Virus record (IMG/VR): IMGVR_UViG_3300023174_000038
Span: 124,001 to 188,000 of that record
DNA length: 64,000 nucleotides
Direction: 5' to 3' (one strand)
Part shown: piece by piece, positions 19,801-57,233 of the stretch
Numbering within the stretch: the first letter of the stretch is position 1
Layout: each line of letters starts with the position of its first letter
Notes under the pieces: model-generated
The model's input: only the letters and a program-made list of their open reading frames with translations
What the model was told of the DNA's origin: nothing
The model's database searches: none
Position numbers and translations under genes: made by a program

Positions 19801-22800
19801 CTATGGTAATTACTGGTACTGGTGTTAATGTAGCCGGTACATTAAACACTTCAGGTAATACTACAGTTGGTAATCTATTCAGTAGCGGATCTGGTGGTAA
19901 TATTAGTAATGTTAATGTCATATCAGCTAATACATTTACTGCATCCGGTAATATTACATCAGGTAACGCTAATTTAGGTAATAGTGTAGTAGCTAATTAC
20001 TTCACTGGTAACTTCTATGGAACAGCCAATCTAGCAACTTATGCAACTACTGCTAATGCGGTAGCCGGTGGTAATGTTTCAGGACAAGTAGCTAATGCAT
20101 TGATAGCAGGTACAGTATATACAAATGCACAACCAAATATCACAAGTGTTGGTAGCTTAACTGGATTAACAGTTAGTAATGCAACCGGTGTAGTAAACTT
20201 TACAACTACGGCTAATGTAACTCTCGGAGCTGTGGCAAATCTACACATAGCAGGTGGTACTAATGGTCAATACTTGTCAACAGATGGTTCTGGTACATTA
20301 ACATGGTCTACGGTTAGTAGTGGTTCATCAAGTAATGTCAGTAATGGCAATAGTAACGTAAACATACCGGCAGCTAATGGCAACGTTAACATTAGTGCTG
20401 TAGGTAATGCAAATATTGTAGTTGTAACTGGCACTGGAGTTAATGTAGCCGGTACACTAAACGTTTCAGGTAATACAACTGTTGCTAATTTGGCTACAAC
20501 TGGCACTGGTGGCAATATATCTAATGTTAATGTTATATCAGCTAATACATTTACTGCTAGTGGTAATATCACTGCCGGTAATGCTAATTTGGGTAATGCA
20601 GTAATCGCTAATTTCTTCATTGGTTCAGGTGCTAATTTAACAAGTTTAACCGGTGCTAATGTATCTGGACAAGTAGCCAATAGCTTAATAGCTGGCACAG
20701 TTTATACAAACGCACAACCAAATATTACAAGTGTTGGTACACTAACCGGAATAACAAGTACCGGAACAGTCAATTTAACTGGTGCTAGTAATGTATCATT
20801 AGGTCCTGTAGGTAATGTAAAAATCACAGGTGGTACTAATGGTCAATATCTATCTACTGATGGATCAGGAAATCTATCTTGGTCTACCGTTGCAGGTGGT
20901 TCATCAAGCAACATAAGTAATGGAAACAGCAACGTAAACATACCGGCAGCTAATGGTAACGTTAACATTAGTGCTGTGGGTAATGCAAACATATTAGTTG
21001 TAACAGGCACCGGTGTTAATGTAGCCGGCACATTAAATGTTTCAGGCAACACCACTGTTGCTAATTTGGCTACAACTGGCACCGGTGGTAATATCAGTAA
21101 CGTAAATGTAGTTTCAGCTAATACATTCACTGCTAGCGGCAATATAACTGGCGGTAATTTAGTAACCAGTGGTGGTAATATTACAGGTGGTAATGTCGTT
21201 TCAGCTAATACGTTAATTGCTAGTGGTAATATTACATCAGGTAATGCTAACTTAGGTAATTTAGTTACAGCTAACTTCTTTAGTGGTAATGGCAGTTTAT
21301 TAACTGGTATTACCGTTAGTGCAGGCAATTCAATTGTAAATGGCAACAGTAATGTAGTAGTATTTGCAAATGGTAATGTAACGACTAGTGTTGCAGGCAA
21401 CGCAAACATTTTAATTGTAACTGGCACCGGAGTTAACGTCTCTGGTACATTGAATGTTACAGGTAATACTACTGTAGGTAACTTAGTTACTAGTGGATCA
21501 GGTGGTACATTATCTAATATTAACGTTGTATCAGCTAATACTTTTACTGCATCTGGTAATATTACAGGAGCTAATGCTAACTTAGGTAATAGTGTAATTG
21601 CTAATTACTTCACGGGTAATTTTTACGGAACTGCCAACTCAGCAACAACTGCAGGTACAGTTACAACTGCGGCACAACCAAATATTACATCAGTTGGTAC
21701 ATTAACTGGTGTAACAAGTACAGGCACTGTCAATTTAACTGGTGCTAGTAATGTATCATTGGGCCCAGTAGCTAATGTACATATTACAGGTGGTACTAAT
21801 GGTCAATATCTATCTACTGACGGGTCTGGTACATTATCTTGGTCTACCGTCAGTTCAGGCGCCGCAAGTAATATTGCAAATGGCAATAGTAATGTAAACA
21901 TACCATCAGCTAATGGCAATGTTAATATCAGTGCAGTTGGTAATGCCAATGTTGTAGTAGTCACTGGCACAGGAGCTAACATTGCTGGTACACTAAATGC
22001 TACAGGTAATATTATTGCCGGTGGAGGGACCGGTGGTAGTATAACTGGTGCTAACTCAATTAGTGCTAATTACTTTATTGGTACCTTATATGGAACAGCT
22101 AACTTAGCAACTTATGCAACAACAGCTAATAGTGTAGCTGGTGGTAATGTCTCCGGACAAGTAGCTAACGCATTAGTCTCAGGTACTGTCTATACAAATG
22201 CACAGCCAAACATCACATCAGTTGGATCATTAACTGGATTAACAGTAAGCAATGCAACAGGAATTGTTAATTTCACAACTACCGCAAACGTAACTCTTGG
22301 TGCTGTAGCTAACTTACATATAGCAGGTGGTACTAATGGTCAATATCTGTCTACTGATGGATCAGGAAATCTATCTTGGTCTACAGTTAGTAGTGGTTCA
22401 TCAAGTAATGTCAGTAATGGAAATAGTAATGTAAACATCCCGACAGCTAACGGTAATATTAACTTAACTGCAGTTGGTAATACAACTATGGTGGTAACTG
22501 GCACTGGTGTTAATGTAGCCGGTACATTAAATGTTACAGGTAATACTACTGTAGGTAACTTAGTTACTAGTGGATCAGGTGGTACATTATCTAATATTAA
22601 CGTTGTTTCTGCTAATACATTTACTGCATCAGGTAACATAACATCCGGTAATGCTAACTTAGGTAATAGTGTAACTGCTAATTATTTTATTGGATCCGGT
22701 AATAACTTAAGTAACATACAAGCCGCTAATGTATCTGGACAAGTAGCCAACGCATTAGTCTCAGGTACTGTCTATACAAATGCACAACCAAATATAACAA

Positions 22801-25800
22801 GTGTCGGTTCACTAACTGGGTTAACTGTAAGCAATGCAACAGGTGTAGTTGATTTTACAACTACAGCTAATGTCACATTAGGAGCAGTTGCTAACGTACA
22901 TATCAGTGGTGGCACTAATGGATATGTATTAAGTACAAATGGATCAGGCGCATTAAGTTGGGTAGCTCAATCGGGTGGAGGTGGTGGTAGTAATATCAGT
23001 AATGGAAACAGTAATGTTAACATACCGGCTGCTAATGGAAACGTTAACATAAGTGCAGTTGGTAATGCTAATGTAGTAGTAATTACTGGTACTGGAGCAA
23101 ATATCACCGGTACAGCAAATATTACCGGTAATCTAAGTGCAGGTAATATCATTGCTGGTTCAGGTTCAGGTGGTAACATATCTAATGCAAATGTTATTTC
23201 AGCTAATACATTCACCGCTACTGGTAATATAACTAGTGGTAATGCTAATTTGGGTAATAGTGTAACTGCTAATTACTTCACTGGTAACTTCTATGGTACA
23301 GCTAACTTAGCTACATACGCAACTACTGCTAATAGTGTTGCCGGTGCTAATGTATCTGGACAAGTAGCTAATAGTTTAATAGCCGGCACAGTATATACAA
23401 ATGCACAACCAAACATAACATCAGTTGGTACATTAACCGGTATAACAAGTACCGGAACAGTTAATTTAACTGGTGCAAGTAACGTATCATTGGGACCTGT
23501 AGGTAATGTAAAAATTACAGGTGGTACTAATGGGCAATATCTATCTACTGATGGATCAGGAAATCTATCTTGGTCTACTGTAGCAAGCGGTTCATCAAGT
23601 AATATCAGTAATGGAAACAGTAATGTAAATATACCAGCCGCTAATGGCAATATTAATCTAACTGCAGTTGGTAATACAACTATGGTTATTACTGGCACAG
23701 GGGTTAATATAGCAGGGACATTAAACACTTCAGGTAATATTACATCAGGTAATGCTAATTTAGGTAACAGTGTAACTGCTAATTACTTCACTGGTAACTT
23801 CTATGGAACAGCTAACTTAGCAACTTATGCAACAACAGCTAATAGTGTAGCTGGTGGTAATGTCTCCGGACAAGTAGCTAACGCATTAGTCTCAGGTACT
23901 GTCTATACAAATGATCAACCAAATATCACTAGTGTTGGATCATTAACTGGTTTAACTGTAAGCAACGCCTCAGGTGTAGTTAATTTCACTACTACTGCAA
24001 ATGTAACACTAGGTGCAGTTACTAACGTACATATCAGTGGTGGCACTAATGGTTATGTATTAAGTACAGATGGATCAGGAACATTAAGTTGGGTAGCCCA
24101 ATCAGGTGGAGGTGGAGGCGGTAGTAATATCAGTAATGGAAACAGTAATGTAAACATACCAGCCGCTAATGGAAACGTTAACATATCAGCAGTTGGTAAT
24201 GCTAATGTAGTAGTAATTACTGGTACCGGGGCAAACATCACTGGTACAGCAAATATTACCGGTAATCTAAGTGCAGGTAATATCATTGCTGGTTCAGGTT
24301 CAGGTGGTAATATATCTAATGCAAACGTTATCTCAGCTAATACATTTACTGCATCTGGTAATATCACATCCGGTAATGCTAACTTGGGTAATAGTGCAAC
24401 TGCTAATTATTTTACTGGTAACTTTTATGGAACAGCTAACTTAGCAACTTATGCCACTACAGCTAATAGTGTTGCAGGAGCTAATGTATCTGGACAAGTA
24501 GCTAATGCATTGATATCAGGCACCGTATATACAAATGCACAACCCAATATCACATCAGTTGGTACACTAAGTAGTTTAGCAGTAACAGCTAATATCACAT
24601 CCGGTAATGCTAACTTGGGTAATAGTGCAGTAGCTAATTATTTTACTGGTAACTTTTATGGAACAGCTAACTTAGCAACTTATGCCACTACAGCTAATAG
24701 TGTTGCAGGTGCTAATGTATCTGGACAAGTAGCTAATAGTTTAATAGCCGGCACAGTATATACAAATGCACAACCTAATATCACTAGCGTAGGTAGCTTA
24801 ACTGGTCTAACTGTAAGCAACGCAACCGGTGTAGTTAATTTCACTACTACTGCAAATGTAACATTAGGTGCAGTTGGAAATCTACATATTTCTGGTGGTA
24901 CAAGTGCATATGTGTTAAGCACTGATGGTGCTGGTAATTTAAGTTGGGTAGCTCAAACAGGAGGTGGAGGCGGCAGTAATATCAGTAATGGAAACAGTAA
25001 TGTAAACATACCGTCTGCTAATGGAAACATTAATTTAACCGCAGTTGGCAATACAACTATGGTAATTACTGGTACTGGTGCAAACATAGCCGGTACAGCA
25101 AACATAACTGGTAATTTAAGTGCAGGAAATATCATTGCTGGTTCAGGATCAGGTGGTAATATATCTAATGCAAATGTTATCTCAGCTAACACATTTACTG
25201 CATCCGGCAACATAACTGCAGGTAATTTATCTATAACTGGTCTATCTAATTTAGGTGCAGTAGGTAATGTTGTCATTACAGGCGGAACCAATGGTTATGT
25301 GTTAAGTACAAATGGCTCAGGTGGATTAAGTTGGATTGCATCTGGTGGCGGTGGAGCCAATATTAGTAACGGCACAAGTAATATTAATATTGCGGCATCA
25401 GGTGGTAACATCACAATGGGTGTTGGTGGAACAGCAAATGTAGTAGTTGTTAGTACTACTGGCATTTCAGCTGCCATACAACCTAGAGTTGTAACTATTG
25501 CAGACGGAACATCAATTAGTATAAATGCTGATACTACTGATATGGCTATTCAAACAAATACACAAGCGGCCGGTACATTAACTATTAATGCACCATCAGG
25601 GACCTTATATCAAGGTCAAAAAATTATGTTAAGATTGCAATCTACTAATGTACAAACGTTCAGTTGGAATGCAGTGTTTAATAGTTCAACAGATTTAAAT
25701 TTACCTACAACATCATCCGGAAGTAGTAAATATGATTATATAGGATTTATATATAATTCAACTCAATCAAAATGGAATATAATTGCCAAAAACTTTGGCT

Positions 25801-25805
25801 TCTAA
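10833..25805 (+). CDS. Giant (4990 aa) repeat fibre/virion protein
   Basis: Single 15-kb ORF with about 20 copies of the W-containing G(Q)Y(V)LxT(D/N)GxGxLxW junction, built from the same modules as 1..4284; distinct globular C-terminal domain (QPRVVTIADG...KWNIIAKNFGF). Confidence 0.85.
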   Translation: MAITKLQPFNLDTTANYTFANITATNANLGNAATANYFIGSGNNLSNIQGANVTGAVSSATTSGTVTTAAQPNITSVGTLSGVISTGNVNLTSASNVALGPVANVHITGGTTGQYLQTDGSGNLSWSTVSSGAASNISNGNSNVNIPSANGNINLTAVGNTTMVITGTGVNVAGTLNVTGNTTVGNLVTSGSGGTLSNINVVSANTFTASGNITSGNANLGNSVTANYFTGNFYGTANLATYATTANSVAGGNVSGQVANALISGTVYTNAQPNITSVGTLSSLAVTANITSGNANLGNNVTANYFTGNGSLLTGITTSGLSNGNSNVNIPAANGNVNISAVGNANILVVTGTGVNVAGTLNVTGNATVGNIVTSGSGGNVSNVNVISANTFIASGNITAGNVVTSGSGGNISNANVISANTFTASGNITSANANLGNAVIANFFIGSGNNLSNIQAANVSGQVSNSLISGTVYTNAQPNITSVGSLTGLTVSNATGVVNFTTTANVTLGAVANLHISGGTSGQYLSTDGSGTLSWATVSSGASSNISNGNSNVNIPSANGNVNISAVGNANILVVTGTGVNVAGTLNATGNASLGNLVTTGSGGNISNANVVSANTFIASGNITAGNVVTSGSGGNISNANVISANTFTASGNITSGNANLGNSAVANYFTGNLYGTANLATYATTANAVAGGNVSGQVANALISGTVYTNAQPNITSVGTLSSLAVTANITSGNANLGNLVTANYFTGNGSLLTGITVSAGNSIVNGNSNVSIPAANGNVNISAVGNANIVVVTGTGANISGTLNISGNTTVSNLISSGSGGNISNANVVSANTFTASGNITAGNITTGAGSGGNITGANVISANTFTASGNITGANANLGNSVTANYFIGNFYGTANSATTAGTVTTAAQPNITSVGTLTGITSTGTVNLTSASNVSLGPVGNVKITGGTTGQYLSTDGSGNLSWSTVSSGSSSNISNGNSNVNIPSANGNINLTAVGNTTMVVTGTGVNVAGTLNVTGNATIGNITTGAGSGGNITGANVISANTFTASGNITGGNANLGNNVSANYFTGNLYGTANLATYATTANSVAGANVSGQVANSLISGTVYTNAQPNITSVGTLSSLAVTANITSGNANLGNNVTANYFTGNGSLLTGITVSAGNTIVNGNSNVLVSANGNVTTSVAGNANILIVTGTGVNVAGTLNVTGNATVGNIVTSGSGGNVSNVNVISANTFIASGNLTAGNINTTGSGGNIGNANVISANTFTASGNITAGNANLGNSAVANYFTGNFYGTANLATYATTANSVAGGNVSGQVANALISGTVYTNAQPNITSVGSLTGLTVSNASGVVNFITTSNVSLGAVGNVKITGGTTGQYLSTDGSGNLSWSTVSSGSTSNISNGNSNVNIPAANGNVNISAVGNANILVVTGTGVNVAGTLNVTGNATVGNIVTSGSGGNVSNVNVISANTFIASGNLTAGNINTTGSGGNIGNANVISANTFTASGNITSANANLGNSAVANYFTGNFYGTANLATYATTANSVAGANVSGQVANALISGTVYTNAQPNITSVGTLTGITSTGTANLTGASNVALGPVANVHITGGTSGQYLSTDGSGTLSWSTVSSGAASNISNGNSNVNIPAANGNVNISAVGNANILVVTGTGVNVAGTLNTTGNTTVGNLFSSGSGGNISNVNVISANTFTASGNITAGNVVTSGSGGNISNANVISANTFTASGNITSSNANLGNAATANFFIGSGNNLSNIQAANISGQVANSLIAGTVYTNAQPNITSVGSLTGLTVSNATGVVNLTTTANVTLGAVANLHISGGTSGQYLSTDGSGTLSWSTVSSGSTSNISNGNSNVNIPAANGNVNISSAGNANILIVTGTGVNVAGTLNTTGNTTVGNLFSSGSGGNISNVNVISANTFTASGNITAGNVVTSGSGGNISNANVISANTFSASGNITSGNANLGNSAIANYFTGNFYGTANLATYATTANAVAGANVSGQVANALVAGTVYTNAQPNITSVGSLTGLTVSNATGVVNLTTTANVTLGAVANLHISGGTSGQYLSTDGSGTLTWSTVSAGAASNISNGNSNVNIPAANGNVNISSAGNANIVVVTGTGANITGTLNVTGNATVGNIVTSGSGGNVSNVNVISANTFIASGNLTAGNISTTGSGGNIGNANVISANTFTASGNITSANANLGNSVVANYFTGNFYGTSNLATYATTANAVAGGNVSGQVANALVAGTVYTNAQPNITSVGSLTGLTVSNATGVVNLTTTANVTLGAVANLHISGGTSGQYLSTDGSGTLTWSTVSAGAASNIANGNSNVNIPAANGNVNISAVGNANVLVVTGTGVNVAGTLNVSGNTTVSNLISSGAGGNISNANVISANTFSATGNITVGNLVTSGSGGNITGGNVISANTLTASGNITAANANLGNSVVANYFTGNFYGTANTATTAGTVTTAAQPNITSVGSLTGLTVSNATGVVNLTTTANVTLGAVGNLHISGGTSGQYLQTDGSGTLTWATVSSGSTSNISNGNSNVNIPTANGNVNISAVGNANILVVTGTGVNVTGTLNTTGNTTVGNLFSSGSGGNISNVNVISANTFTASGNITSANANLGNSAVANYFTGNFYGTANLATYATTANAVAGGNVSGQVANALVSGTVYTNAQPNITSVGSLTGLTVSNATGVVNFTTTANVTLGAVANLHIAGGTNGQYLSTDGSGTLTWSTVSSGSTSNISNGNSNVNIPAANGNVNISAVGNANILVVTGTGVNVAGTLNVSGNTTVSNLISSGTGGNISNANVISANTFSATGNITVGNLVTSGSGGNITGGNVVSANTLIASGNITAANANLGNSVVANYFTGNFYGTANSATTASTVTTAAQPNITSVGTLSGVTSTGTVNLTGASNVSLGPVGNVKITGGTNGQYLQTDGSGTLTWATVSSGSSSNISNGNSNVNIPSANGNINLTAVGNTTMVITGTGVNVAGTLNTSGNTTVGNLFSSGSGGNISNVNVISANTFTASGNITSGNANLGNSVVANYFTGNFYGTANLATYATTANAVAGGNVSGQVANALIAGTVYTNAQPNITSVGSLTGLTVSNATGVVNFTTTANVTLGAVANLHIAGGTNGQYLSTDGSGTLTWSTVSSGSSSNVSNGNSNVNIPAANGNVNISAVGNANIVVVTGTGVNVAGTLNVSGNTTVANLATTGTGGNISNVNVISANTFTASGNITAGNANLGNAVIANFFIGSGANLTSLTGANVSGQVANSLIAGTVYTNAQPNITSVGTLTGITSTGTVNLTGASNVSLGPVGNVKITGGTNGQYLSTDGSGNLSWSTVAGGSSSNISNGNSNVNIPAANGNVNISAVGNANILVVTGTGVNVAGTLNVSGNTTVANLATTGTGGNISNVNVVSANTFTASGNITGGNLVTSGGNITGGNVVSANTLIASGNITSGNANLGNLVTANFFSGNGSLLTGITVSAGNSIVNGNSNVVVFANGNVTTSVAGNANILIVTGTGVNVSGTLNVTGNTTVGNLVTSGSGGTLSNINVVSANTFTASGNITGANANLGNSVIANYFTGNFYGTANSATTAGTVTTAAQPNITSVGTLTGVTSTGTVNLTGASNVSLGPVANVHITGGTNGQYLSTDGSGTLSWSTVSSGAASNIANGNSNVNIPSANGNVNISAVGNANVVVVTGTGANIAGTLNATGNIIAGGGTGGSITGANSISANYFIGTLYGTANLATYATTANSVAGGNVSGQVANALVSGTVYTNAQPNITSVGSLTGLTVSNATGIVNFTTTANVTLGAVANLHIAGGTNGQYLSTDGSGNLSWSTVSSGSSSNVSNGNSNVNIPTANGNINLTAVGNTTMVVTGTGVNVAGTLNVTGNTTVGNLVTSGSGGTLSNINVVSANTFTASGNITSGNANLGNSVTANYFIGSGNNLSNIQAANVSGQVANALVSGTVYTNAQPNITSVGSLTGLTVSNATGVVDFTTTANVTLGAVANVHISGGTNGYVLSTNGSGALSWVAQSGGGGGSNISNGNSNVNIPAANGNVNISAVGNANVVVITGTGANITGTANITGNLSAGNIIAGSGSGGNISNANVISANTFTATGNITSGNANLGNSVTANYFTGNFYGTANLATYATTANSVAGANVSGQVANSLIAGTVYTNAQPNITSVGTLTGITSTGTVNLTGASNVSLGPVGNVKITGGTNGQYLSTDGSGNLSWSTVASGSSSNISNGNSNVNIPAANGNINLTAVGNTTMVITGTGVNIAGTLNTSGNITSGNANLGNSVTANYFTGNFYGTANLATYATTANSVAGGNVSGQVANALVSGTVYTNDQPNITSVGSLTGLTVSNASGVVNFTTTANVTLGAVTNVHISGGTNGYVLSTDGSGTLSWVAQSGGGGGGSNISNGNSNVNIPAANGNVNISAVGNANVVVITGTGANITGTANITGNLSAGNIIAGSGSGGNISNANVISANTFTASGNITSGNANLGNSATANYFTGNFYGTANLATYATTANSVAGANVSGQVANALISGTVYTNAQPNITSVGTLSSLAVTANITSGNANLGNSAVANYFTGNFYGTANLATYATTANSVAGANVSGQVANSLIAGTVYTNAQPNITSVGSLTGLTVSNATGVVNFTTTANVTLGAVGNLHISGGTSAYVLSTDGAGNLSWVAQTGGGGGSNISNGNSNVNIPSANGNINLTAVGNTTMVITGTGANIAGTANITGNLSAGNIIAGSGSGGNISNANVISANTFTASGNITAGNLSITGLSNLGAVGNVVITGGTNGYVLSTNGSGGLSWIASGGGGANISNGTSNINIAASGGNITMGVGGTANVVVVSTTGISAAIQPRVVTIADGTSISINADTTDMAIQTNTQAAGTLTINAPSGTLYQGQKIMLRLQSTNVQTFSWNAVFNSSTDLNLPTTSSGSSKYDYIGFIYNSTQSKWNIIAKNFGF
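11334..11512 (+). repeat. 179-nt exact direct repeat (second copy 22503..22681)
   Basis: Base-by-base comparison by eye within the giant gene. Confidence 0.75.
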
Positions 25806-45843: not shown

Positions 45844-46856
45844 ACAAGTTATACGAAGAAATAGAATATCTACCCGAAGAGTTAGATGACGAATATGAAT
45901 ACTATGAAATTGACGAAGCGGAGGGACGAATCGCTTTATGTACGCTGGGATCTATTAACTGGGGTGCGTTCCGTAATCCTGAAGACATGCGCCGTGCTTG
46001 TCGCATATTGCATCGTAGCCTCAATAACATTCTTGACTATCAAGATTTTCTATCCATTCAATCTAAACTATCAAACGATGAAATCAGACCTCTTGGAATT
46101 GGAATCACTAATCTTGCCTACTGGCACGCCAAGCGAAGTCTTAAGTACGGAGAGAAAGACTCCTTGGCTGAAGTCAAGACGTGGATGGAACACTTATCCT
46201 TCTACTTAACTGAAGCAAGTGTAGAACTAGCACAAGAACGCGGTCGTTGTGAACATAGCGATAAAACACGTTATGGTCAAGGCATCTTCCCCTGGGAACT
46301 ACGTGCTAAAGGTGTAAACGAATTAACTAACTTTGATCCAGAACTTAATTGGGAAGGACTACGTGCTATGATGCGTAGTCATGGTGTCCGTAATGCTACG
46401 CAAATGGCTGTTGCTCCTGTAGAATCAAGTAGTGTAGTTATTAATAGCACTAATGGTATTGAAATGCCAATGAGTTTGATAAGTGTTAAAGAAAGTAAAG
46501 CAGGAAGTTTTGTACAAGTTGTTCCAGAATATCATAAGTTGAAAAACAAATATCAATTGATGTGGGATCAAAAAGATTGTGATGGTTATCTAAAAACAGC
46601 GGCAGTGATTGCAGCCTATGTTGACCAAAGCATAAGTACTAATACGTTTTATAATCCAGCACATTTCCCTGAGCGTAAAGTCCCAACAACATTGATTGCT
46701 AAGAACTTAATGCAGGCACACTATTATGGTATCAAGACCTTCTATTATAGCTTGATTAACAAAGCAGGTAGTAAGAGCCAAGATGAAACTGTATTAGATT
46801 TACCAAGTGGCTTTAATGATATGGATGAAGAAGATTGCGAGGCTTGTAAATTATAA
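45840..46856 (+). CDS. nrdA: Ribonucleotide reductase class Ia alpha subunit, C-terminal fragment
   Basis: AAGGA RBS; EGRIALCTL resolving Cys, RPLGIG, APVESSS, NGIE, DQSIS, KTFYY tyrosine pair, C-terminal CEACKL. Confidence 0.95.
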   Translation: MNKLYEEIEYLPEELDDEYEYYEIDEAEGRIALCTLGSINWGAFRNPEDMRRACRILHRSLNNILDYQDFLSIQSKLSNDEIRPLGIGITNLAYWHAKRSLKYGEKDSLAEVKTWMEHLSFYLTEASVELAQERGRCEHSDKTRYGQGIFPWELRAKGVNELTNFDPELNWEGLRAMMRSHGVRNATQMAVAPVESSSVVINSTNGIEMPMSLISVKESKAGSFVQVVPEYHKLKNKYQLMWDQKDCDGYLKTAAVIAAYVDQSISTNTFYNPAHFPERKVPTTLIAKNLMQAHYYGIKTFYYSLINKAGSKSQDETVLDLPSGFNDMDEEDCEACKL

Positions 46857-47563
46857 TGAACTATCAAAAAATATATAATAATTTAATAGAGCGTTCAAAA
46901 AACCGATTAGTTGAAGGATATAGTGAAAAACATCACATTATCCCTCGCTGCCTAGGTGGAACAAATGAAAAAGAAAATATTACTCGGTTAACTGCGGAAG
47001 AACACTATTTGGCTCATCAACTTCTTGTTAAGATGTATCCTAACAATTTTAAACTAATTCGTGCAATGCATATGATGACAGTTAATAGTAATTATACTAT
47101 AAGAAACAATAAATCATTTGGTTGGATTCGCAGACAAAACGCCATTGCAATGTCGGTAAGTATGAAGGTATATCAAAAAGAAAACGGTCACCCAAGAGGT
47201 ATGGCAGGTAAAACTAATACAATAGCGTCTAACATTAAACGCTCGGGTAGTATGAAGGGTATACCGTGCCCAAGTCGCGGTGTAAGAGGGCCGAGAGGAT
47301 CACGGGCATCCCCGCTAAAAGTAGTATGTCGGTTAGATAATAGAAAAGAGTTAGATATGGCAAATTTTATGGCATACTGCAAGAGATTAGATAATCCTGC
47401 AAAAGCAATAGAACAAGATGCTAATCGTTCAAAAGCAACAAAAGGTATTCCAAAACCGCAAGAAAAAGTTAAATGTCCGCATTGTCTATTAATCGGCGGA
47501 GCAAATATTATGAAGCATCATCATTTTGATAATTGTAAAGAAAAGAAAGAAGAACATGTCTAA
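46856..47563 (+). CDS. HNH homing endonuclease (MobE-like) between nrdA and nrdB
   Basis: EKHHIIPRCLGG...N...LTAEEHYLAH; C-terminal CPHC...H...C finger; same position as T4 mobE. Confidence 0.85.
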   Translation: MNYQKIYNNLIERSKNRLVEGYSEKHHIIPRCLGGTNEKENITRLTAEEHYLAHQLLVKMYPNNFKLIRAMHMMTVNSNYTIRNNKSFGWIRRQNAIAMSVSMKVYQKENGHPRGMAGKTNTIASNIKRSGSMKGIPCPSRGVRGPRGSRASPLKVVCRLDNRKELDMANFMAYCKRLDNPAKAIEQDANRSKATKGIPKPQEKVKCPHCLLIGGANIMKHHHFDNCKEKKEEHV

Positions 47564-54610: not shown

Positions 54611-54727
54611 ATGTTAGAAACATTATTTTGGTTAGCACTAGGTGCTTTTATTGGTTGGAATTTCCCTCAACCTCAGTTTGCAAAGAACATTCAAACAAAA
54701 ATTTTAACTATGTTCAAAAAGGATTAA
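54611..54727 (+). CDS. Small membrane protein (38 aa), absent from the ORF track
   Basis: AAGGAG RBS; MLETLFWLALGAFIGWNFPQPQFAKNIQTKILTMFKKD; TAAATA upstream. Confidence 0.7.
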   Translation: MLETLFWLALGAFIGWNFPQPQFAKNIQTKILTMFKKD

Positions 54728-54765
54728 TAACCCTCACAAACGGGAGCACCTAGATAAATAGTTAT

Positions 54766-55371
54766 ATGAAAAATAAATATGGCTTATTAGTGTATTGCTC
54801 GCATTGTGGAACTGAGTTTGTAACTAAACCTAGATTTTTAGAGTTTTGTTCAACTCCTTGTAAAAACCCGATCAATCGTGTAGGTAATATACCTTGGAAC
54901 AAGGGTATAAAAATGACACCTGATCAGGTGTCCAAATTAAACACAAAAGGTCTTAAAAAGGGTCACGGATGGAACAAGGGGAAAGATAATCCAAGACAAA
55001 AAGAAAAATGGACTGGCTCATCAAATCCAAATTGGGAAGGAAAATTAAACAATCAAAGGCCTAAAAAACAAATAAATGATGAATTAGTTAAATACAAGAG
55101 GGAATGTAGGAAAGCAACTCGCCGGTCTCTATACAGACTTAGAAAGCAAAATTTAATGCCAGTCACTGGCAAAAAGAAAACAGATATTCAAGTAGATCAT
55201 ATCATACCCTTTAGACAGGGATATGAACTTAAAATTGACCCTATAATTATAGGACATCTATGCAATTTAAGATTTATAACAGGTGAAGAAAACAGAAAGA
55301 AATGGGATACGTTTCAATCTGAGGAAATAATTAATAATATATTGGAGAACTATAATGGCATATTCAGATAA
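54766..55371 (+). CDS. HNH homing endonuclease with Zn-finger and NUMOD3-like N-terminus
   Basis: CSHC...FCS..C, PWNKG repeats, QVDHIIP...NLRFI...EN..K; overlaps the iscU start by 17 nt. Confidence 0.85.
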   Translation: MKNKYGLLVYCSHCGTEFVTKPRFLEFCSTPCKNPINRVGNIPWNKGIKMTPDQVSKLNTKGLKKGHGWNKGKDNPRQKEKWTGSSNPNWEGKLNNQRPKKQINDELVKYKRECRKATRRSLYRLRKQNLMPVTGKKKTDIQVDHIIPFRQGYELKIDPIIIGHLCNLRFITGEENRKKWDTFQSEEIINNILENYNGIFR

Positions 55372-55753
55372 AGTGGTTGACCACTACGAAAACCCACGAA
55401 ATGTGGGAACTTTTAATAAGGAGGACACGCACGTTGGGACTGGTATGGTAGGAGCCCCGGCGTGTGGTTAGTTAGGTGATGTAATGAAACTCCAAATAAA
55501 AGTAAATAAAGAAACAGGAATTATAACAGATGCCAAATTTAAAACATATGGGTGTGGGTCGGCAATTGCTTCTTCAAGTCTTGTCACAGACTGGGTCAAG
55601 GGTAAAACATTGGATGAAGCAACATCCATTAAAAACTCCCATATTGCCGACGAACTCAGCCTCCCCCCAGTCAAAATCCACTGCAGTATCCTCGCCGAAG
55701 ACGCCATCAAAGCCGCAGTAGAAGATTATAGAAAGAAGTATAATGGCCAATAA
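55355..55753 (+). CDS. iscU: Fe-S cluster scaffold IscU, interrupted by a 9-nt in-frame insertion containing TAG
   Basis: GGAGA RBS, ATG 55355: MAYSDKVVDHYENPRNVG...GMVGAPACG*LGDVMKLQIKV...GCGSAIASSS...LPPVKIHCS. The ORF track shows only the part from 55484. Confidence 0.92.
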
Positions 55754-56045
55754 ATTAGCAAAATTTTTAAACTCACAACGCCGTCATCGGGACGAACTAG
55801 CAGTTAAGAAACAAGTTAAGATAGCAAAAGCACACGGATTAACAAATAAAGATAAAGCAATAAAAGAACCACATAGATTAGCAAAACATCATGCTATGGA
55901 TTGTGGTATCCCAGGATGTCCTTTATGTAGTAACCCACGTAGGTCACATAAAGACAAACTTACAGCACAAGAGAAACGTTTGTTTCAGGACGTTGAGAAA
56001 ACGACAGATAAACACAGTAACGGATTACCACCTAGTAACGAATAA
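55743..56045 (+). CDS. Small basic hypothetical protein with CxxxxCxxC motif
   Basis: HAMDCGIPGCPLCSNPR. Confidence 0.6.
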   Translation: MANKLAKFLNSQRRHRDELAVKKQVKIAKAHGLTNKDKAIKEPHRLAKHHAMDCGIPGCPLCSNPRRSHKDKLTAQEKRLFQDVEKTTDKHSNGLPPSNE

Positions 56046-56118: not shown

Positions 56119-56694
56119 ATGAAAACAGTCGGAGATAAATTAACAGCATTTGCAATTACAGGTGTCAAACCAGGACAACCAGAAGATGCATACTTCACAA
56201 TTACAGAGAAATCATTTGAAGGTAAGTGGAAAGTAATCGTTTACTATCCAAAAGACTTTACATTTGTATGTCCTACAGAAATTGTAGCCTATGACAAGTT
56301 GACTACGGACTTTGCTGACCGTGATGCAGTATTGCTCACAGGATCAACAGACAATGAGTTCTGTAAGACTGCTTGGCAAAAAGCACATCCTGACTTAGCA
56401 AAGATTAGTCATACTCAGTTTGCTGACACACAACGCCGTAGCAGTGAGTATAATGAAGACACCGGACGCTATGAAAACTTCAGTCTGATTGAACAATTAG
56501 GTGTATTCTATGCCCCCGCTGGTGCGGCACTACGTGCAACATTTATTGTTGATCCACAAAATGTTATTCAACATATTACAGTTAACAACTTAGATGTTGG
56601 TCGTAACCCAGAAGAAACATTGCGTGTATTAGATGCATTACAAACTGGCGAACTATGTCCATGTAATCGTGCTATCGGTGGAGAAACACTATAA
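56119..56694 (+). CDS. ahpC: Peroxiredoxin (alkyl hydroperoxide reductase C)
   Basis: YPKDFTFVCPTE, RATFIVDP, VGRNPEETLR, LCPC. Confidence 0.93.
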   Translation: MKTVGDKLTAFAITGVKPGQPEDAYFTITEKSFEGKWKVIVYYPKDFTFVCPTEIVAYDKLTTDFADRDAVLLTGSTDNEFCKTAWQKAHPDLAKISHTQFADTQRRSSEYNEDTGRYENFSLIEQLGVFYAPAGAALRATFIVDPQNVIQHITVNNLDVGRNPEETLRVLDALQTGELCPCNRAIGGETL

Positions 56695-57233
56695 TGAATC
56701 CAATCACCTTAAATGGTGATTGGGTACAATCTGTAAAAGATAGTATTCCAGATCACTCTAAAGACATTAAACTAAACATTGATGCAGTTATTAATCGTTC
56801 AGGATTAGATCCAGTTGATACACATGCTATTGCTTATGTATCAGCATTAGCCGCAGGCAATGGTGGTTTAGCATTTGAGATTGAGCATAACAGTCCATTG
56901 TTTAGTAACGAAGCAGAGCGTGAAGCCGCAAAGACAGCCGCAAGTTTGATGGGTCAAAACAATATTTGGTATCCATTTACTGAGATGGCTAATGACGAAT
57001 CAATGAAGGGTTTACCAGCTAGTTTGCGTATGAATGCTTATGCAACTCACGGTGGTGTATCTAAGAAGAAATTTGAAATGTATTCATTAGCCGCAAGTAT
57101 TATTGGTAAATGTCATTTCTGTGTGAAAGCACATTATGATACATTAAAGAAAGAAGGCATGACTACACAAGAGTTGATGGCTATTGGCCGTATTGCTGCC
57201 GTAGTTAATGCTATAGGTAAAGTATCTATTTAA
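56694..57233 (+). CDS. ahpD: Alkyl hydroperoxide reductase D (carboxymuconolactone decarboxylase fold)
   Basis: KDIKLN, AASLMGQNNIWY, LRMN, FEMYSLAAS..GKCHFCVKAH; TAATG-coupled to ahpC. Confidence 0.9.
   Translation: MNPITLNGDWVQSVKDSIPDHSKDIKLNIDAVINRSGLDPVDTHAIAYVSALAAGNGGLAFEIEHNSPLFSNEAEREAAKTAASLMGQNNIWYPFTEMANDESMKGLPASLRMNAYATHGGVSKKKFEMYSLAASIIGKCHFCVKAHYDTLKKEGMTTQELMAIGRIAAVVNAIGKVSI

What the first reader, a model, noticed from the sequence alone, without database searches (positions are those of the whole stretch)
55355..55753. Candidate miniature ribosomal-bypass (hop) element in phage iscU: GGT-TAG-TTA-GGT
Seen: iscU reads TGT(C37) GGT(G38, 55466-68) TAG TTA GGT(55475-77) GAT(D39) GTA ATG. 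Removing exactly 9 nt restores the invariant IscU motif PACGDVM. Both flanks are intact: RBS, start, C37, the GCG Cys, LPPVK, H-C, with no other stop or frameshift, which argues against a decayed pseudogene. Known: T4 gene 60 bypassing uses a Gly take-off codon immediately followed by UAG and a matching Gly landing codon (50-nt gap). Inference: peptidyl-tRNA-Gly stalls at UAG and re-pairs 9 nt downstream, giving full-length IscU; this could act as an expression attenuator. Alternatives: (a) split IscU, because AGGTGAT at 55474-80 is a well-spaced Shine-Dalgarno for ATG 55484, giving a 38-aa and an 89-aa piece lacking D39/V40; (b) amber readthrough with a 3-aa insertion; (c) recent inactivation or assembly error.
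Basis: partly seen in the sequence, partly recalled or inferred. Interest (0 to 1): 0.93.

Follow-up and report, generated by a model that had tools for sequence, protein, structure and literature searches.

The report
Mini ribosome-hop cassette in phage iscU
A phage iron-sulfur scaffold gene is interrupted by a 9-base stop-containing insert that travels with a homing-endonuclease gene and a conserved RNA hairpin, and comparative evidence indicates ribosomes hop over it, which would make it only the second family of this kind after phage T4 gene 60.

Summary
The window's iscU reads TGT GGT TAG TTA GGT GAT GTA ATG, and removing 9 nt restores PACGDVM.

It is not an artefact or a one-off. 85 distinct relatives from many metagenomes carry an insert at exactly this codon junction. 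There are 34 insert types of 4, 6, 7, 8, 9 or 10 nt.
- 31 of the 34 types put a stop codon right after the Gly codon.
- 33 of 34 end in a GGN Gly codon directly before intact Asp39-Val40 codons.
- Both iscU pieces stay under purifying selection.
- Some carriers have Leu instead of Met41 and no usable start codon, so a split gene cannot explain them.
- Lengths that are not multiples of three exclude readthrough.

- The insert belongs to a mobile cassette with an HNH-like endonuclease gene directly upstream (54766-55371). The cassette has a sharp co-conversion boundary about 20 nt after the insert.
- Every carrier, and no non-carrier, encodes a 10-bp hairpin ending on the take-off codon (55428-55437 / 55457-55466). 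It is kept by compensatory changes at synonymous sites.

Best reading: a programmed Gly-to-Gly hop assisted by a refolding 5' hairpin. The insert probably protects the cassette from its own nuclease. No protein evidence exists yet.

The parts
54766..55371 (+). Free-standing HNH-like endonuclease ORF (201 aa plus stop). It has a Cys4 zinc-finger-like N-terminus, WNKG repeats and a C-terminal QxDHIIP...N...NRxKW motif. It overlaps the iscU start by 17 nt.
   Evidence: ORF. The family alignment A1 has invariant D144-H145, N167 and N176. Pfam HNH hits are sub-threshold only: E 0.036 for the window protein, and 11 of 20 members hit with best E 0.009. The AF2 model shows beta-beta-alpha at residues 141-179. 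Foldseek against PDB found nothing significant. All 80 viral loci with a homolog lie directly 5' of iscU. None of the 75 uninterrupted iscU loci nearest the window has it.
55355..55468 (+). iscU ORF1: codons 1-38 (Met1 to Gly38), including the cluster ligand Cys37.
   Evidence: Pfam NifU_N profile positions 1-35, E 4.7e-11. Carriers form almost one clade on the N-piece tree: 2 state changes, against 20 on the C-piece tree. pN/pS is 0.164 among 55 carriers.
55418..55425 (+). Purine-rich Shine-Dalgarno-like AAGGAGGA just 5' of the hairpin. Its role is unexplained.
   Evidence: GGAG, GAGG or AGGA occurs at -54..-42 in 61/61 distinct carriers, against 9/75 non-carriers.
55428..55437 (+). 5' arm of the carrier-specific RNA hairpin (CGCACGTTGG), positions -41..-32 relative to the end of the take-off codon.
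   Evidence: On alignment A2 of 36 distinct carriers, 360/360 cells are paired, 34 cells changed on both sides, and the covariation score is 0.276 against 0.085 for shuffles (0/500 reach it). Slid registers give 29-51% paired. The window's own MFE fold recovers the helix.
55457..55466 (+). 3' arm of the hairpin (CCGGCGTGTG). It covers the Pro-Ala-Cys codons plus the first G of the take-off codon. The loop is 55438-55456.
   Evidence: Pairs -37:-7 (AU, CG, UA, GC), -34:-10 (UA, CG, GC, GU, UG, AU) and -40:-4 (GC, GU, AU) covary at synonymous third positions. In 76 non-carriers the same pairs form in 18%, 41% and 9%. Mean hairpin energy is -14.3 kcal/mol in carriers against +0.7 in non-carriers.
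55466..55468 (+). Take-off codon GGT (Gly38).
   Evidence: It is GGN in all carriers and is directly followed by a stop codon in 31 of 34 insert types.
55469..55477 (+). Non-coding gap TAGTTAGGT. TAG (55469-71) sits in the A site at take-off, and the landing codon GGT is at 55475-77.
   Evidence: The identical insert occurs in diverged relatives (about 83% aa identity in the C piece). Across the family there are 34 types of 4-10 nt, and 33 of 34 end in GGN directly before GAY GTN.
55478..55753 (+). iscU ORF2: Asp39 to Gln128 plus the TAA stop. It contains Cys63, LPPVK and His105-Cys106.
   Evidence: Pfam NifU_N profile positions 38-124, E 1.1e-35. The Asp39-Val40 codons show 7 synonymous variants and no non-synonymous change in 85 distinct carriers. 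From about 55499 onward the sequence is about 98.5% identical to the insert-less, HNH-less relative L002.
54730..55498 (.). Approximate extent of the mobile cassette relative to the related phage L002: HNH-like gene, diverged iscU 5' part with hairpin, gap, and about 20 nt of co-converted 3' flank.
   Evidence: Homology with L002 stops at window 54729. The HNH ORF has no counterpart in L002. The N piece is only about 70% identical, there are 4 differences in the first 21 nt after the gap, and then 4 differences in about 250 nt.

Best explanation
The 9 nt at 55469-55477 are a conserved non-coding gap inside a functional iscU gene, and they are part of a mobile cassette. The cassette consists of a free-standing HNH-like endonuclease gene, the first 38 codons of iscU, a 10-bp RNA hairpin encoded within those codons, and the gap itself.

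Proposed mechanism:
1. The ribosome decodes Gly38 (GGT in the P site) and meets TAG in the A site.
2. Peptidyl-tRNA-Gly releases the take-off codon and the mRNA slides 9 nt. Refolding of the hairpin, whose 3' arm lies in the ribosome's mRNA exit path at take-off, would favour this forward movement and block backward movement.
3. The tRNA re-pairs with the landing GGT (55475-77). Decoding resumes at GAT (Asp39), giving full-length IscU with the native PACGDVM motif.

The gap probably exists because it splits the DNA site that the cassette's own endonuclease cuts in insert-less iscU. That site lies in a motif that cannot change at the protein level.

Shown here: the gap's conservation and rules, its linkage to the endonuclease gene, the co-conversion boundary, purifying selection on both pieces, the lack of a start codon in some carriers, and the covarying hairpin that tracks the gap.

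Inferred: that the hop actually happens and how efficient it is, the hairpin's mechanical role, and the self-immunity role of the gap.
For: (1) Rules of the gap. There are 85 distinct carrier sequences and 34 types of 4, 6, 7, 8, 9 or 10 nt, covering all three frames. 31 of 34 types have a stop directly after the Gly codon, and one more has the rare codon AGG. 33 of 34 end in GGN immediately before Asp39. A Gly-to-Gly hop is the one mechanism that restores the frame for all of them.

(2) Asp39-Val40 codons behave as translated codons. An upstream-anchored scan with no downstream constraint found GGN GAY GTN ATG retained in 52/52 hits. Only synonymous variants occur in the 85 carriers.

(3) Purifying selection among carriers. 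pN/pS is 0.164 for the N piece and 0.186 for the C piece, with pS 0.66-0.78. Non-carriers give 0.159 and 0.152. Because the N piece is nearly monophyletic in carriers, this divergence accumulated while linked to the gap.

(4) No start codon for a separate C piece in L183-185, L195, L209, L215 and L216.

(5) The hairpin. Ten base pairs are 100% paired in 36 distinct carriers, with 3 pairs showing compensatory changes; 0/500 shuffles reach the covariation score. It was confirmed in 68/68 readable metagenome carriers. An unbiased all-against-all column scan finds only these pairs. The hairpin is absent from non-carriers. It tracks the insert, not the HNH gene: HNH-minus/insert-plus loci have 10/10 pairs, while HNH-plus/insert-minus loci have 4-7/10.

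(6) Cassette. 0/75 uninterrupted loci have the HNH-like ORF, while all 5 carriers in the same sample do. 56 of 74 readable HNH-plus loci carry an insert. A mosaic boundary lies about 20 nt 3' of the gap.

(7) Precedents. T4 MobA plus the gene 60 gap form a mobile cassette in which the gap blocks self-cleavage (bioRxiv 10.1101/2022.08.31.505936; PMC7026636). Synthetic stop-hops exist (PMC5009743). Refolding upstream hairpins next to a shift site promote forward (+1) shifts, including on 70S ribosomes (PMC6321510).

(8) The same architecture recurs at a second iscU site in relatives. There is a hairpin abutting a Pro codon, then a stop, then a 5-6 nt gap in LPP|VKIHC, next to a different (Vsr-like) endonuclease gene.
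Against: There is no protein, ribosome-profiling or reporter evidence; the hop is inferred.

The third base of take-off and landing codons is identical in only 10 of 34 types. It falls in the same wobble box in 14 and is mismatched in 9, which is not better than expected from the codon marginals. Only GG pairing is supported.

Three types lack a stop after take-off (AGGC, TGTTGGA, TGTTGAC), and TGTTGAC lacks a Gly landing codon.

Synthetic stop-hops without extra signals are known as low-efficiency events, according to the Atkins 2016 review and my own recollection.

In the window itself, ATG 55484 preceded by AGGTGAT could also allow re-initiation, so some split product cannot be excluded.

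The HNH assignment is sub-threshold in Pfam, and Foldseek and PDB searches gave nothing significant.

Eighteen HNH-plus loci have no insert. They carry PSCGDVL-type alleles instead, so the insert is not the only way to coexist with the nuclease.

The geometry of 'hairpin zipping equals hop length' is only approximate.
Confidence: 0.72

Rival explanations
1. Split IscU. Translation terminates at TAG, giving a 38-aa N fragment. It re-initiates at ATG 55484 (SD-like AGGTGAT), giving an 89-aa C fragment without Asp39-Val40. The two fragments then assemble into a working scaffold.
For: In the window an SD-like AGGTGAT lies 3 nt before ATG 55484. 80 of 85 distinct carriers keep ATG at codon 41. Homing endonucleases are known to split genes whose halves still work, such as T4 genes 39/60 and Aeh1 nrdA (bioRxiv 10.1101/2022.08.31.505936).
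Against: Met41 and the GGTGAT are native to uninterrupted iscU (Gly-Asp-Val-Met), so they are not evidence of a new start. Five distinct carrier lineages have CTT or TTA at codon 41 and no start codon before residue 71, yet keep an intact ORF. The Asp39-Val40 codons change only synonymously. This model does not explain the constant GGN before Asp39 or the covarying hairpin.
Confidence: 0.08
2. Dead gene. The selfish endonuclease cassette inactivated iscU. The flanks look conserved only because each homing event brings the cassette into a fresh intact gene, and the hairpin serves the cassette in some other way.
For: C pieces of carriers are scattered among non-carriers: 20 state changes on the C-piece tree. 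The window's C piece is about 98.5% identical to an uninterrupted relative. C-piece conservation alone therefore cannot prove ongoing selection. iscU is an accessory gene for a phage.
Against: The N piece travels with the cassette (2 state changes). Its synonymous sites have diverged to near saturation (pS 0.66) while pN/pS stays at 0.16, the same as in intact genes. Among the 61 carrier loci from the two viral-contig scans examined, none has a decayed piece. The two that first looked broken turned out to be a TTG start (L107) and a second structured mini-insert (L098). The stop, GGN and Asp-Val rules persist across HNH proteins that have diverged to about 50% identity. Insert-only loci that lack the nuclease gene keep the hairpin and both ORFs.
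Confidence: 0.08
3. Ordinary recoding that adds residues. Stop-codon readthrough handles 6- and 9-nt inserts, and +1 or -1 frameshifting handles the others. The result is IscU with one to three extra residues (G-X-G-D and similar) rather than a hop.
For: Many 7-nt inserts start with TGAC, the weak-termination context used in the prfB +1 frameshift (prfB knowledge is from memory). A +1 shift on the 7-nt types would read X-Gly-Asp. Refolding 5' hairpins stimulate +1 frameshifting (PMC6321510).
Against: Each insert length would need a different mechanism, including a +2/-1 event for 8 nt. The residue X would be D, E, N, V, R, S or K without constraint. The insertion would fall between the cluster ligand Cys37-Gly38 and Asp39 in an otherwise invariant motif. 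GGN tRNA slippage onto GNN overlapping codons is poorly supported by pairing.
Confidence: 0.08
4. Sequencing or assembly artefact, or a private mutation of this one contig.
For: None beyond the prior probability. Two unrelated iscU contigs in the metagenome scan do carry simple 1-nt indels (L237, L279).
Against: The identical 9-nt insert occurs in several independent assemblies with diverged flanks. 34 related insert types obey the same rules. The 1-nt indel contigs lack the hairpin (4/10 pairs), whereas all real carriers have it.
Confidence: 0.01

Closest known systems
Phage T4 gene 60 translational bypass with the MobA homing-endonuclease cassette
   Same: Both have a Gly take-off codon followed directly by a stop, a Gly landing codon, and resumption that restores a conserved protein. 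In both, the gap sits in a highly conserved coding stretch next to a free-standing HNH-family endonuclease gene and is inherited with it. In both, some loci have lost the nuclease gene but keep the gap. A 5' stem-loop is part of the T4 model (PMC7026636; bioRxiv 10.1101/2022.08.31.505936).
   Different: The gap here is 4-10 nt rather than about 50 nt, so there is no room for the take-off (A-site) stem-loop or an internal SD. The target is iscU, not the topoisomerase gene. The nuclease lies upstream of an unsplit gene instead of splitting it. There is no detectable homology to T4 gp60.1 or the MobA fragments beyond the HNH motif. The 5' hairpin is strictly conserved with covariation here, whereas in the gene 60 family the 5' SL is reported as not conserved. 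The third base of the landing codon is often unmatched.
Synthetic 'stop-hops' in E. coli (Weiss et al. 1987, as reviewed in PMC5009743)
   Same: [quoted passage not shown] The relatives L125 (GGT TAG GGC) and L216 (GGT TGA GGA) have exactly that 9-nt layout.
   Different: The synthetic hops are engineered, low-level events. The review states that no natural in-frame stop-hop was known. Here the element is natural, conserved, comes in all three frames, and has its own structured stimulator.
Mitochondrial 'byps' of Magnusiomyces capitatus (Lang et al. 2014, cited in PMC7026636)
   Same: Both are short mobile inserts in coding sequence that are bypassed with matched take-off and landing codons.
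   Different: Byps are 27-55 nt, mitochondrial, present in many genes, have a take-off stem-loop inside the gap, and are not linked to an endonuclease gene.
Refolding upstream hairpins that shift ribosomes forward (PMC3639245, PMC6321510)
   Same: An RNA hairpin lies directly 5' of the recoding site. Its re-formation behind the ribosome disfavors backward movement and favors forward movement.
   Different: Those cases modulate -1/+1 frameshifting, mostly in engineered or eukaryotic viral contexts. They are not hops over a stop codon, and they are not part of a DNA mobile element.

Membership tests
IscU / NifU_N Fe-S scaffold (PF01592) | Profile match above the curated threshold | tested here: met
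   N piece 43.4 bits and C piece 122.9 bits, against a cut-off of 22. Together they cover profile positions 1-35 and 38-124.
IscU / NifU_N Fe-S scaffold (PF01592) | Cluster-ligand residues Cys37, Asp39, Cys63, His105-Cys106 and the LPPVK motif (roles from established knowledge of IscU) | tested here: met
   All are present in the two pieces. Asp39 is the first codon after the gap.
IscU / NifU_N Fe-S scaffold (PF01592) | One uninterrupted reading frame | tested here: not met
   TAG at 55469-71.
Programmed translational bypassing (gene 60 type) | [quoted passage not shown] | tested here: met
   Removing the gap restores the invariant PACGDVM seen in 75 of 80 relatives.
Programmed translational bypassing (gene 60 type) | Matched take-off and landing codons | tested here: inconclusive
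   The window has GGT/GGT. Across the family GGN/GGN holds in 33 of 34 types, but the third base is identical in only 10, in the same wobble box in 14, and mismatched in 9. This is not better than the codon marginals predict.
Programmed translational bypassing (gene 60 type) | Stop or slow-to-decode codon in the A site at take-off | tested here: met
   31 of 34 types have TAG, TGA or TAA, and one has AGG. Two types have TGT.
Programmed translational bypassing (gene 60 type) | Take-off stem-loop formed by the start of the gap | tested here: not met
   The gap is only 4-10 nt, so no such structure is possible.
Programmed translational bypassing (gene 60 type) | [quoted passage not shown] | tested here: met
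   A 10-bp hairpin ends on the take-off codon. 360/360 cells are paired and 3 pairs show compensatory changes.
Programmed translational bypassing (gene 60 type) | Nascent-peptide signal | not testable with these tools
   Carriers share NCG-CAN codons (T/P/A/S, then H/Q) 10-11 residues before take-off. The RNA pairing explains these codons.
Programmed translational bypassing (gene 60 type) | A single polypeptide spanning the gap is actually made | not testable with these tools
   This needs a reporter assay and mass spectrometry.
Programmed translational bypassing (gene 60 type) | Homology to the gene 60 / MobA element | tested here: not met
   hhalign of A1 against T4 gp60.1 gave probability 0.2%. 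Against the MobA fragment it gave probability 1%, with only the HHI(L)P motif aligned.
Free-standing HNH homing endonuclease | HNH (beta-beta-alpha-metal) catalytic motif | tested here: inconclusive
   D144-H145, N167 and N176 are invariant, and a beta-beta-alpha element is predicted. Pfam HNH is below threshold (E 0.036; 11 of 20 members, best E 0.009). Profile search against PDB and Foldseek were not significant. Some homologs are named McrA by JGI.
Free-standing HNH homing endonuclease | Sporadic presence at one fixed locus among related genomes | tested here: met
   It is always directly 5' of iscU (80/80 loci). It is absent from the 75 nearest uninterrupted loci and cleanly absent in L002.
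Free-standing HNH homing endonuclease | Co-conversion of flanking sequence | tested here: met
   A sharp identity switch (about 70% to 98.5%) lies about 20 nt 3' of the gap. The N-piece and C-piece trees disagree: 2 against 20 state changes.
Free-standing HNH homing endonuclease | Cuts the nuclease-less allele while its own allele is immune | not testable with these tools
   This needs an in vitro cleavage assay.

The most novel reading that the evidence does not exclude
A self-contained module of about 50 nt makes ribosomes hop 4-10 nt. It consists of a hairpin whose 3' arm ends on the take-off codon, a stop codon, a very short gap, and resumption of decoding. Hairpin refolding behind the ribosome would be the main driver, and only minimal tRNA re-pairing would be needed. 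Homing endonucleases have recruited this design at least twice in iscU to break their own DNA targets inside invariant protein motifs. One case is Gly38|Asp39 with an HNH-like enzyme. The other is LPP|VK with a Vsr-like enzyme, and that site has no cognate landing codon at all.
Probability: 0.5. Interest if true: 0.95.

Novelty: new variant of a known kind. Interest (0 to 1): 0.9.

Why it matters
Programmed translational bypassing has essentially one well-studied natural example in bacteria and phages: T4 gene 60. A 2022 survey called that cassette 'unique'. A 2016 review stated that no natural stop-hop was known, although short hops had long been expected.

If ribosomes do hop here, several things follow.
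- This would be a second, independent, endonuclease-linked bypass family, and a much smaller one.
- It has dozens of natural variants in gap length, stop codon and landing codon, plus a hairpin with natural compensatory mutants. That is a ready-made series for dissecting what makes a ribosome slide.
- It would generalise the idea that homing endonucleases protect their own genome by inserting DNA that the ribosome ignores.
- Gene callers will systematically annotate such genes as broken.
- The element is short enough to test directly in standard reporters.

Tried and rejected
**Rejected explanations**
- Amber-codon reassignment or a suppressor tRNA. The window has no tRNA genes and is densely coding under the standard code.
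- Known RNA family or terminator. Rfam gave no hit on 54700-55800 at E up to 1. The consensus terminator scan does not flag the hairpin, and most insert types lack a U-run after it.
- The hairpin serves the HNH gene. Rejected because the hairpin tracks the insert, not the HNH gene.

**Searches that led nowhere**
- Identity of the 201-aa ORF. phmmer and a profile search against PDB gave nothing. Foldseek against PDB was not significant; Cas9 was the top hit at E 0.39. NCBIfam gave nothing.
- Homology to T4 MobA or gp60.1: none (one search failed on frame).
- Cultured phages carrying the cassette: none found. The best hits are 35% partial matches in T4-like Acinetobacter phages. GenBank phage iscU genes appear uninterrupted.
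- Other hop-like sites in the window. A loose scan gave 82 junctions, and only the iscU site has a stable hairpin abutting the take-off codon.
- Literature. Searches for iscU with bypassing or homing endonuclease found no prior report.

**Inconclusive or corrected**
- Take-off/landing third-base covariation as a test of tRNA re-pairing was inconclusive.
- Two apparent 'decayed' carriers were re-examined. L107 simply starts with TTG. The premature stop in L098 is a second structured mini-insert.
Full report
**1. The observation**

The window reads ATG (55355) ... TGT GGT TAG TTA GGT GAT GTA ATG (55463-55486), and then an open frame runs to TAA at 55751-53. ORF listing gives a 38-aa piece (55355-55471) and an 89-aa piece (55484-55753).

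Pfam NifU_N matches both pieces above threshold. The N piece covers profile positions 1-35 and the C piece covers positions 38-124. The only IscU residues missing from the two ORFs are therefore Asp39-Val40, whose codons sit intact between the insert and ATG 55484.

The window carries no tRNA gene and is densely coding under the standard code, including a 4990-aa ORF. Stop-codon reassignment is not the explanation.

**2. The insert is a family, not an accident**

The window comes from IMG/VR contig 3300023174_000038 (348.7 kb). I searched viral contigs with the C piece and read the upstream codons of the 80 best loci. Seventy-five have an uninterrupted GAPACGDVMKLQ. Five are interrupted at exactly the same junction:
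- three have the identical TAGTTAGGT;
- one has TAGCCTGGC;
- one has the 7-nt TGAGGGC.

Further scans:
- A gapped DNA pattern found 57 interrupted loci in viral contigs.
- A scan anchored only on the upstream codons plus a stop found 52 hits, and all 52 retain GGN GAY GTN ATG downstream.
- A search with the neighbouring protein added more types.
- A metagenome scan added 69 carriers.

After removing duplicates there are 85 distinct carrier sequences and 34 (take-off, insert) types, with lengths of 4, 6, 7, 8, 9 and 10 nt. The rules are:
- 31 of 34 types begin with TAG, TGA or TAA directly after the Gly38 codon. One begins with AGG and two with TGT.
- 33 of 34 end with GGN directly before Asp39.
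- The Asp39-Val40 codons occur as seven synonymous variants and never change the amino acid.

IMG/VR and the JGI metagenome contigs overlap, so all counts are of distinct sequences.

**3.

Apart from the gap, the 61 carrier loci from the two viral-contig scans examined have intact N and C pieces. The two apparent exceptions dissolve on inspection. L107 starts with TTG. The premature stop in L098 is a second structured insert, described in section 8.

Pairwise Nei-Gojobori estimates:

| Group | N piece pN/pS | C piece pN/pS |
|---|---|---|
| Carriers | 0.164 | 0.186 |
| Non-carriers | 0.159 | 0.152 |

Synonymous differences are near saturation.

On trees, carrier status changes only twice on the N-piece tree but 20 times on the C-piece tree. 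The N piece has therefore diverged while linked to the insert, and it stayed constrained throughout.

How the alternatives fare:
- Readthrough cannot serve inserts of 4, 7, 8 or 10 nt.
- A split gene cannot serve L183-185, L195, L209, L215 and L216. Their codon 41 is CTT or TTA, and the first possible start codon in that frame is at residue 71 or later, beyond Cys63.
- A mix of frameshifts and readthrough would need a different event for each length. It would also place unconstrained extra residues next to the cluster ligand Cys37.
- A Gly-to-Gly hop is the one event that fits every type.

**4. A mobile endonuclease cassette**

Directly upstream, overlapping the iscU start, lies a 201-aa ORF (54766-55371). 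Its features:
- a Cys4 N-terminus;
- WNKG repeats;
- a C-terminal QxDHIIP...N...NRxKW motif.

Pfam HNH hits are consistent but sub-threshold. The AlphaFold model has a beta-beta-alpha element at residues 141-179. PDB sequence and fold searches were not significant. I therefore call it HNH-like.

The association is strong:
- None of the 75 uninterrupted loci has a homolog, while all five interrupted loci in the same sample do.
- All 80 viral loci holding a homolog have it directly 5' of iscU. Of the 74 that are readable, 56 carry an insert.
- Twelve insert carriers lack the gene cleanly and a few keep remnants. This matches what is described for the T4 MobA element.

I compared the window with L002, a related phage that has neither the ORF nor the insert:
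- flanking homology stops at window 54729;
- the N piece is only about 70% identical;
- four differences fall in the first 21 nt after the insert;
- from about 55499 onward the two are about 98.5% identical.

This is a classic co-conversion boundary.

Eighteen HNH-plus loci have no insert. They carry a different allele (GLVGAP[S/A]CGD[V/L]L) and are scattered over the HNH tree. The insert is therefore one of at least two ways to coexist with this gene.

That the insert blocks self-cleavage is an inference from the T4 MobA/gene 60 precedent.

**5. A carrier-specific RNA hairpin**

I compared per-position conservation upstream of the take-off codon in carriers and non-carriers. This revealed a nucleotide motif, CGCA at -41..-38, that is fixed in carriers even though the amino acids it encodes vary (T/P/A/S, then H/Q).

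The motif extends a latent complementarity between the Val-Gly codons and the Pro-Ala codons into a 10-bp helix. Positions -41..-32 pair with -12..-3, and the last pair uses the first G of the take-off codon. In the window the arms are 55428-55437 and 55457-55466, with a 19-nt loop.

Evidence for the helix:
- On an alignment of 36 distinct carriers, all 360 cells are paired.
- Three pairs show compensatory changes at synonymous third positions: AU 17, CG 15, UA 3, GC 1; UA 21, CG 8, GC 3, GU 2, UG 2; and GC 31, GU 3, AU 2.
- The covariation score is 0.276, against 0.085 for shuffles (0 of 500 reach it). Slid registers pair in only 29-51% of cells.
- In 76 non-carriers, the three covarying pairs and -39:-5 form in only 9-41%.
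- Mean energy of the helix is -14.3 kcal/mol in carriers and +0.7 in non-carriers.
- An all-against-all column scan over 80 distinct carriers recovers only these pairs.
- 68 of 68 readable metagenome carriers have 10/10 pairs. Two contigs with simple 1-nt indels have 4/10.
- Many carriers add an inner stem, but the window does not.

The decisive comparison is. Loci with the insert but without the HNH gene have 10/10 pairs. Loci with the HNH gene but without the insert have 4-7/10. The hairpin therefore belongs to the insert, not to the nuclease gene.

The hairpin matches no Rfam family and does not look like a terminator. The window's own MFE fold recovers it.

**6. Mechanism**

What is shown is the anatomy:
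- a hairpin abutting a Gly codon;
- a stop in the next codon;
- a 1-7 nt spacer;
- a Gly codon;
- translated Asp-Val codons.

What I infer is the following sequence of events.
1. With GGT in the P site and TAG in the A site, the 3' arm of the hairpin lies inside the ribosome's exit path, and the 5' arm is already outside.
2. Once the peptidyl-tRNA lets go, each nucleotide of forward sliding lets roughly one more base pair form. This favours forward movement and blocks backward movement.
3. The tRNA re-pairs with the GG of the landing codon, and decoding resumes.

Precedents:
- the gene 60 model, with its 5' SL, take-off GGA and UAG;
- experiments showing that refolding hairpins just upstream of a shift site promote forward shifts, including on bacterial ribosomes (PMC6321510).

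The match between helix length (10 bp) and maximal gap (10 nt) is suggestive but only approximate.

The third base of the landing codon is not reliably matched, so I do not claim strict codon matching.

A purine-rich SD-like element just 5' of the hairpin is present in 61/61 carriers and 9/75 non-carriers. It remains unexplained.

**7. Comparison with what is known, and novelty**

The closest system is the T4 MobA/gene 60 cassette. The logic is the same: an endonuclease gene plus a bypassed gap in an invariant coding stretch, a Gly-stop take-off, and a Gly landing. The differences are:
- the gap is 5- to 12-fold shorter;
- there is no take-off stem-loop;
- the target gene is different;
- the nuclease shows no detectable homology to MobA fragments beyond the HNH motif;
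- the 5' hairpin is strictly conserved here, whereas in the gene 60 family the 5' SL is reported as not conserved.

The literature held in the library describes the gene 60 cassette as unique and states that no natural stop-hop was known. My searches found no report of an iscU bypass. No cultured phage in GenBank carries the cassette.

I rate this as a new variant of a known kind. It is supported by comparative evidence only.

**8. A second site in relatives**

The apparent premature stop in L098 is a 6-nt insert (TAACTA) between the second Pro and the Val of LPPVKIHC. A scan found the same site interrupted in about a dozen viral contigs: TAA CTN, and once the 5-nt TGACG.

These carriers also have a strong hairpin ending at the take-off Pro codon. 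The MFE of the 72 nt upstream is -22 to -27 kcal/mol, against a mean of -10.5 in 166 non-carriers. The helix is nearly invariant, so covariation is weak.

Nine of the twelve with enough sequence have a 252-aa ORF about 120 nt downstream, against 7 of 258 non-carriers. That ORF gives sub-threshold Vsr, DUF559 and NUMOD3 hits.

There is no cognate Pro landing codon at this site. Four loci carry both inserts.

This repeats the design with a different nuclease and supports the general model. It also suggests the hairpin may matter more than re-pairing. The window itself has a normal LPPVK.

**9. Verdict**

It gains two new pillars: a mobile endonuclease cassette, and a covarying 5' hairpin that tracks the insert. 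Proof needs a reporter and mass-spectrometry experiment and a nuclease assay, both straightforward in laboratory E. coli.

Noticed in passing
L098:3419-3481 and L290-L295, L298-L303 (relatives; not in the window, which reads a normal CTC CCC CCA GTC AAA at about 55663-55677): There is a second stop-containing mini-insert inside the LPP|VKIHC motif of iscU: CCG TAA CTN GTN, and once CCG TGACG GTT. It is preceded by a strong hairpin abutting the Pro codon. It is linked to a 252-aa Vsr-like/NUMOD3-like ORF about 120 nt downstream (9/12 carriers against 7/258 non-carriers). There is no cognate landing codon. L098, L293, L299 and L300 carry both inserts.
   Followed up: partly
L187:2590-3996 (also L188-L191): iscU in these phages contains an intein-like insertion of about 340 aa at the active-site Cys63 (YGC|LTSN...SHN|CGSAI), in addition to the upstream HNH-like gene. 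Phage iscU appears to be a hot spot for selfish elements.
   Followed up: no
window 55418-55425: A purine-rich SD-like AAGGAGGA lies directly 5' of the hairpin. A GGAG, GAGG or AGGA motif is present there in 61/61 distinct carriers and only 9/75 non-carriers. Its function is unknown. It is too far from the take-off codon to pair with the same ribosome's anti-SD unless the hairpin brings it close.
   Followed up: partly
L083, L096, L102, L106, L137, L226, L232 (close relatives of the window); L126: The insert variant TGTTGGA has no stop after the take-off GGT (the A-site codon is TGT), yet it keeps the hairpin and both ORFs. L126 (TGTTGAC) also lacks a Gly landing codon. These do not fit the stall-at-stop rule. 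They may be decaying copies or may hop without a stall.
   Followed up: partly
L154, L169-L173, L187-L191, L194, L197, L198, L204-L206, L210: These loci have the HNH-like gene upstream but no insert and no hairpin. All carry a different iscU allele (GLVGAP[S/A]CGD[V/L]L). They are scattered on the HNH tree (at least 4 origins), which suggests that substitutions at Ala36 and Met41 are an alternative route to coexistence with the nuclease.
   Followed up: partly
window 10833-25805: A single 4990-aa ORF on the + strand, consistent with a jumbo-phage giant structural or injected protein.
   Followed up: no
window 46856-47563: A second, unrelated ORF carries a classical HNH motif (HHIIPRCLGG...N...). 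It is not a member of the iscU-associated family.
   Followed up: no
window 56119-57233: Just downstream of iscU lie an AhpC/TSA peroxiredoxin-like gene (56119-56694) and a CMD/AhpD-like gene (56694-57233). Together with iscU they form a small cluster of redox and Fe-S auxiliary genes.
   Followed up: no
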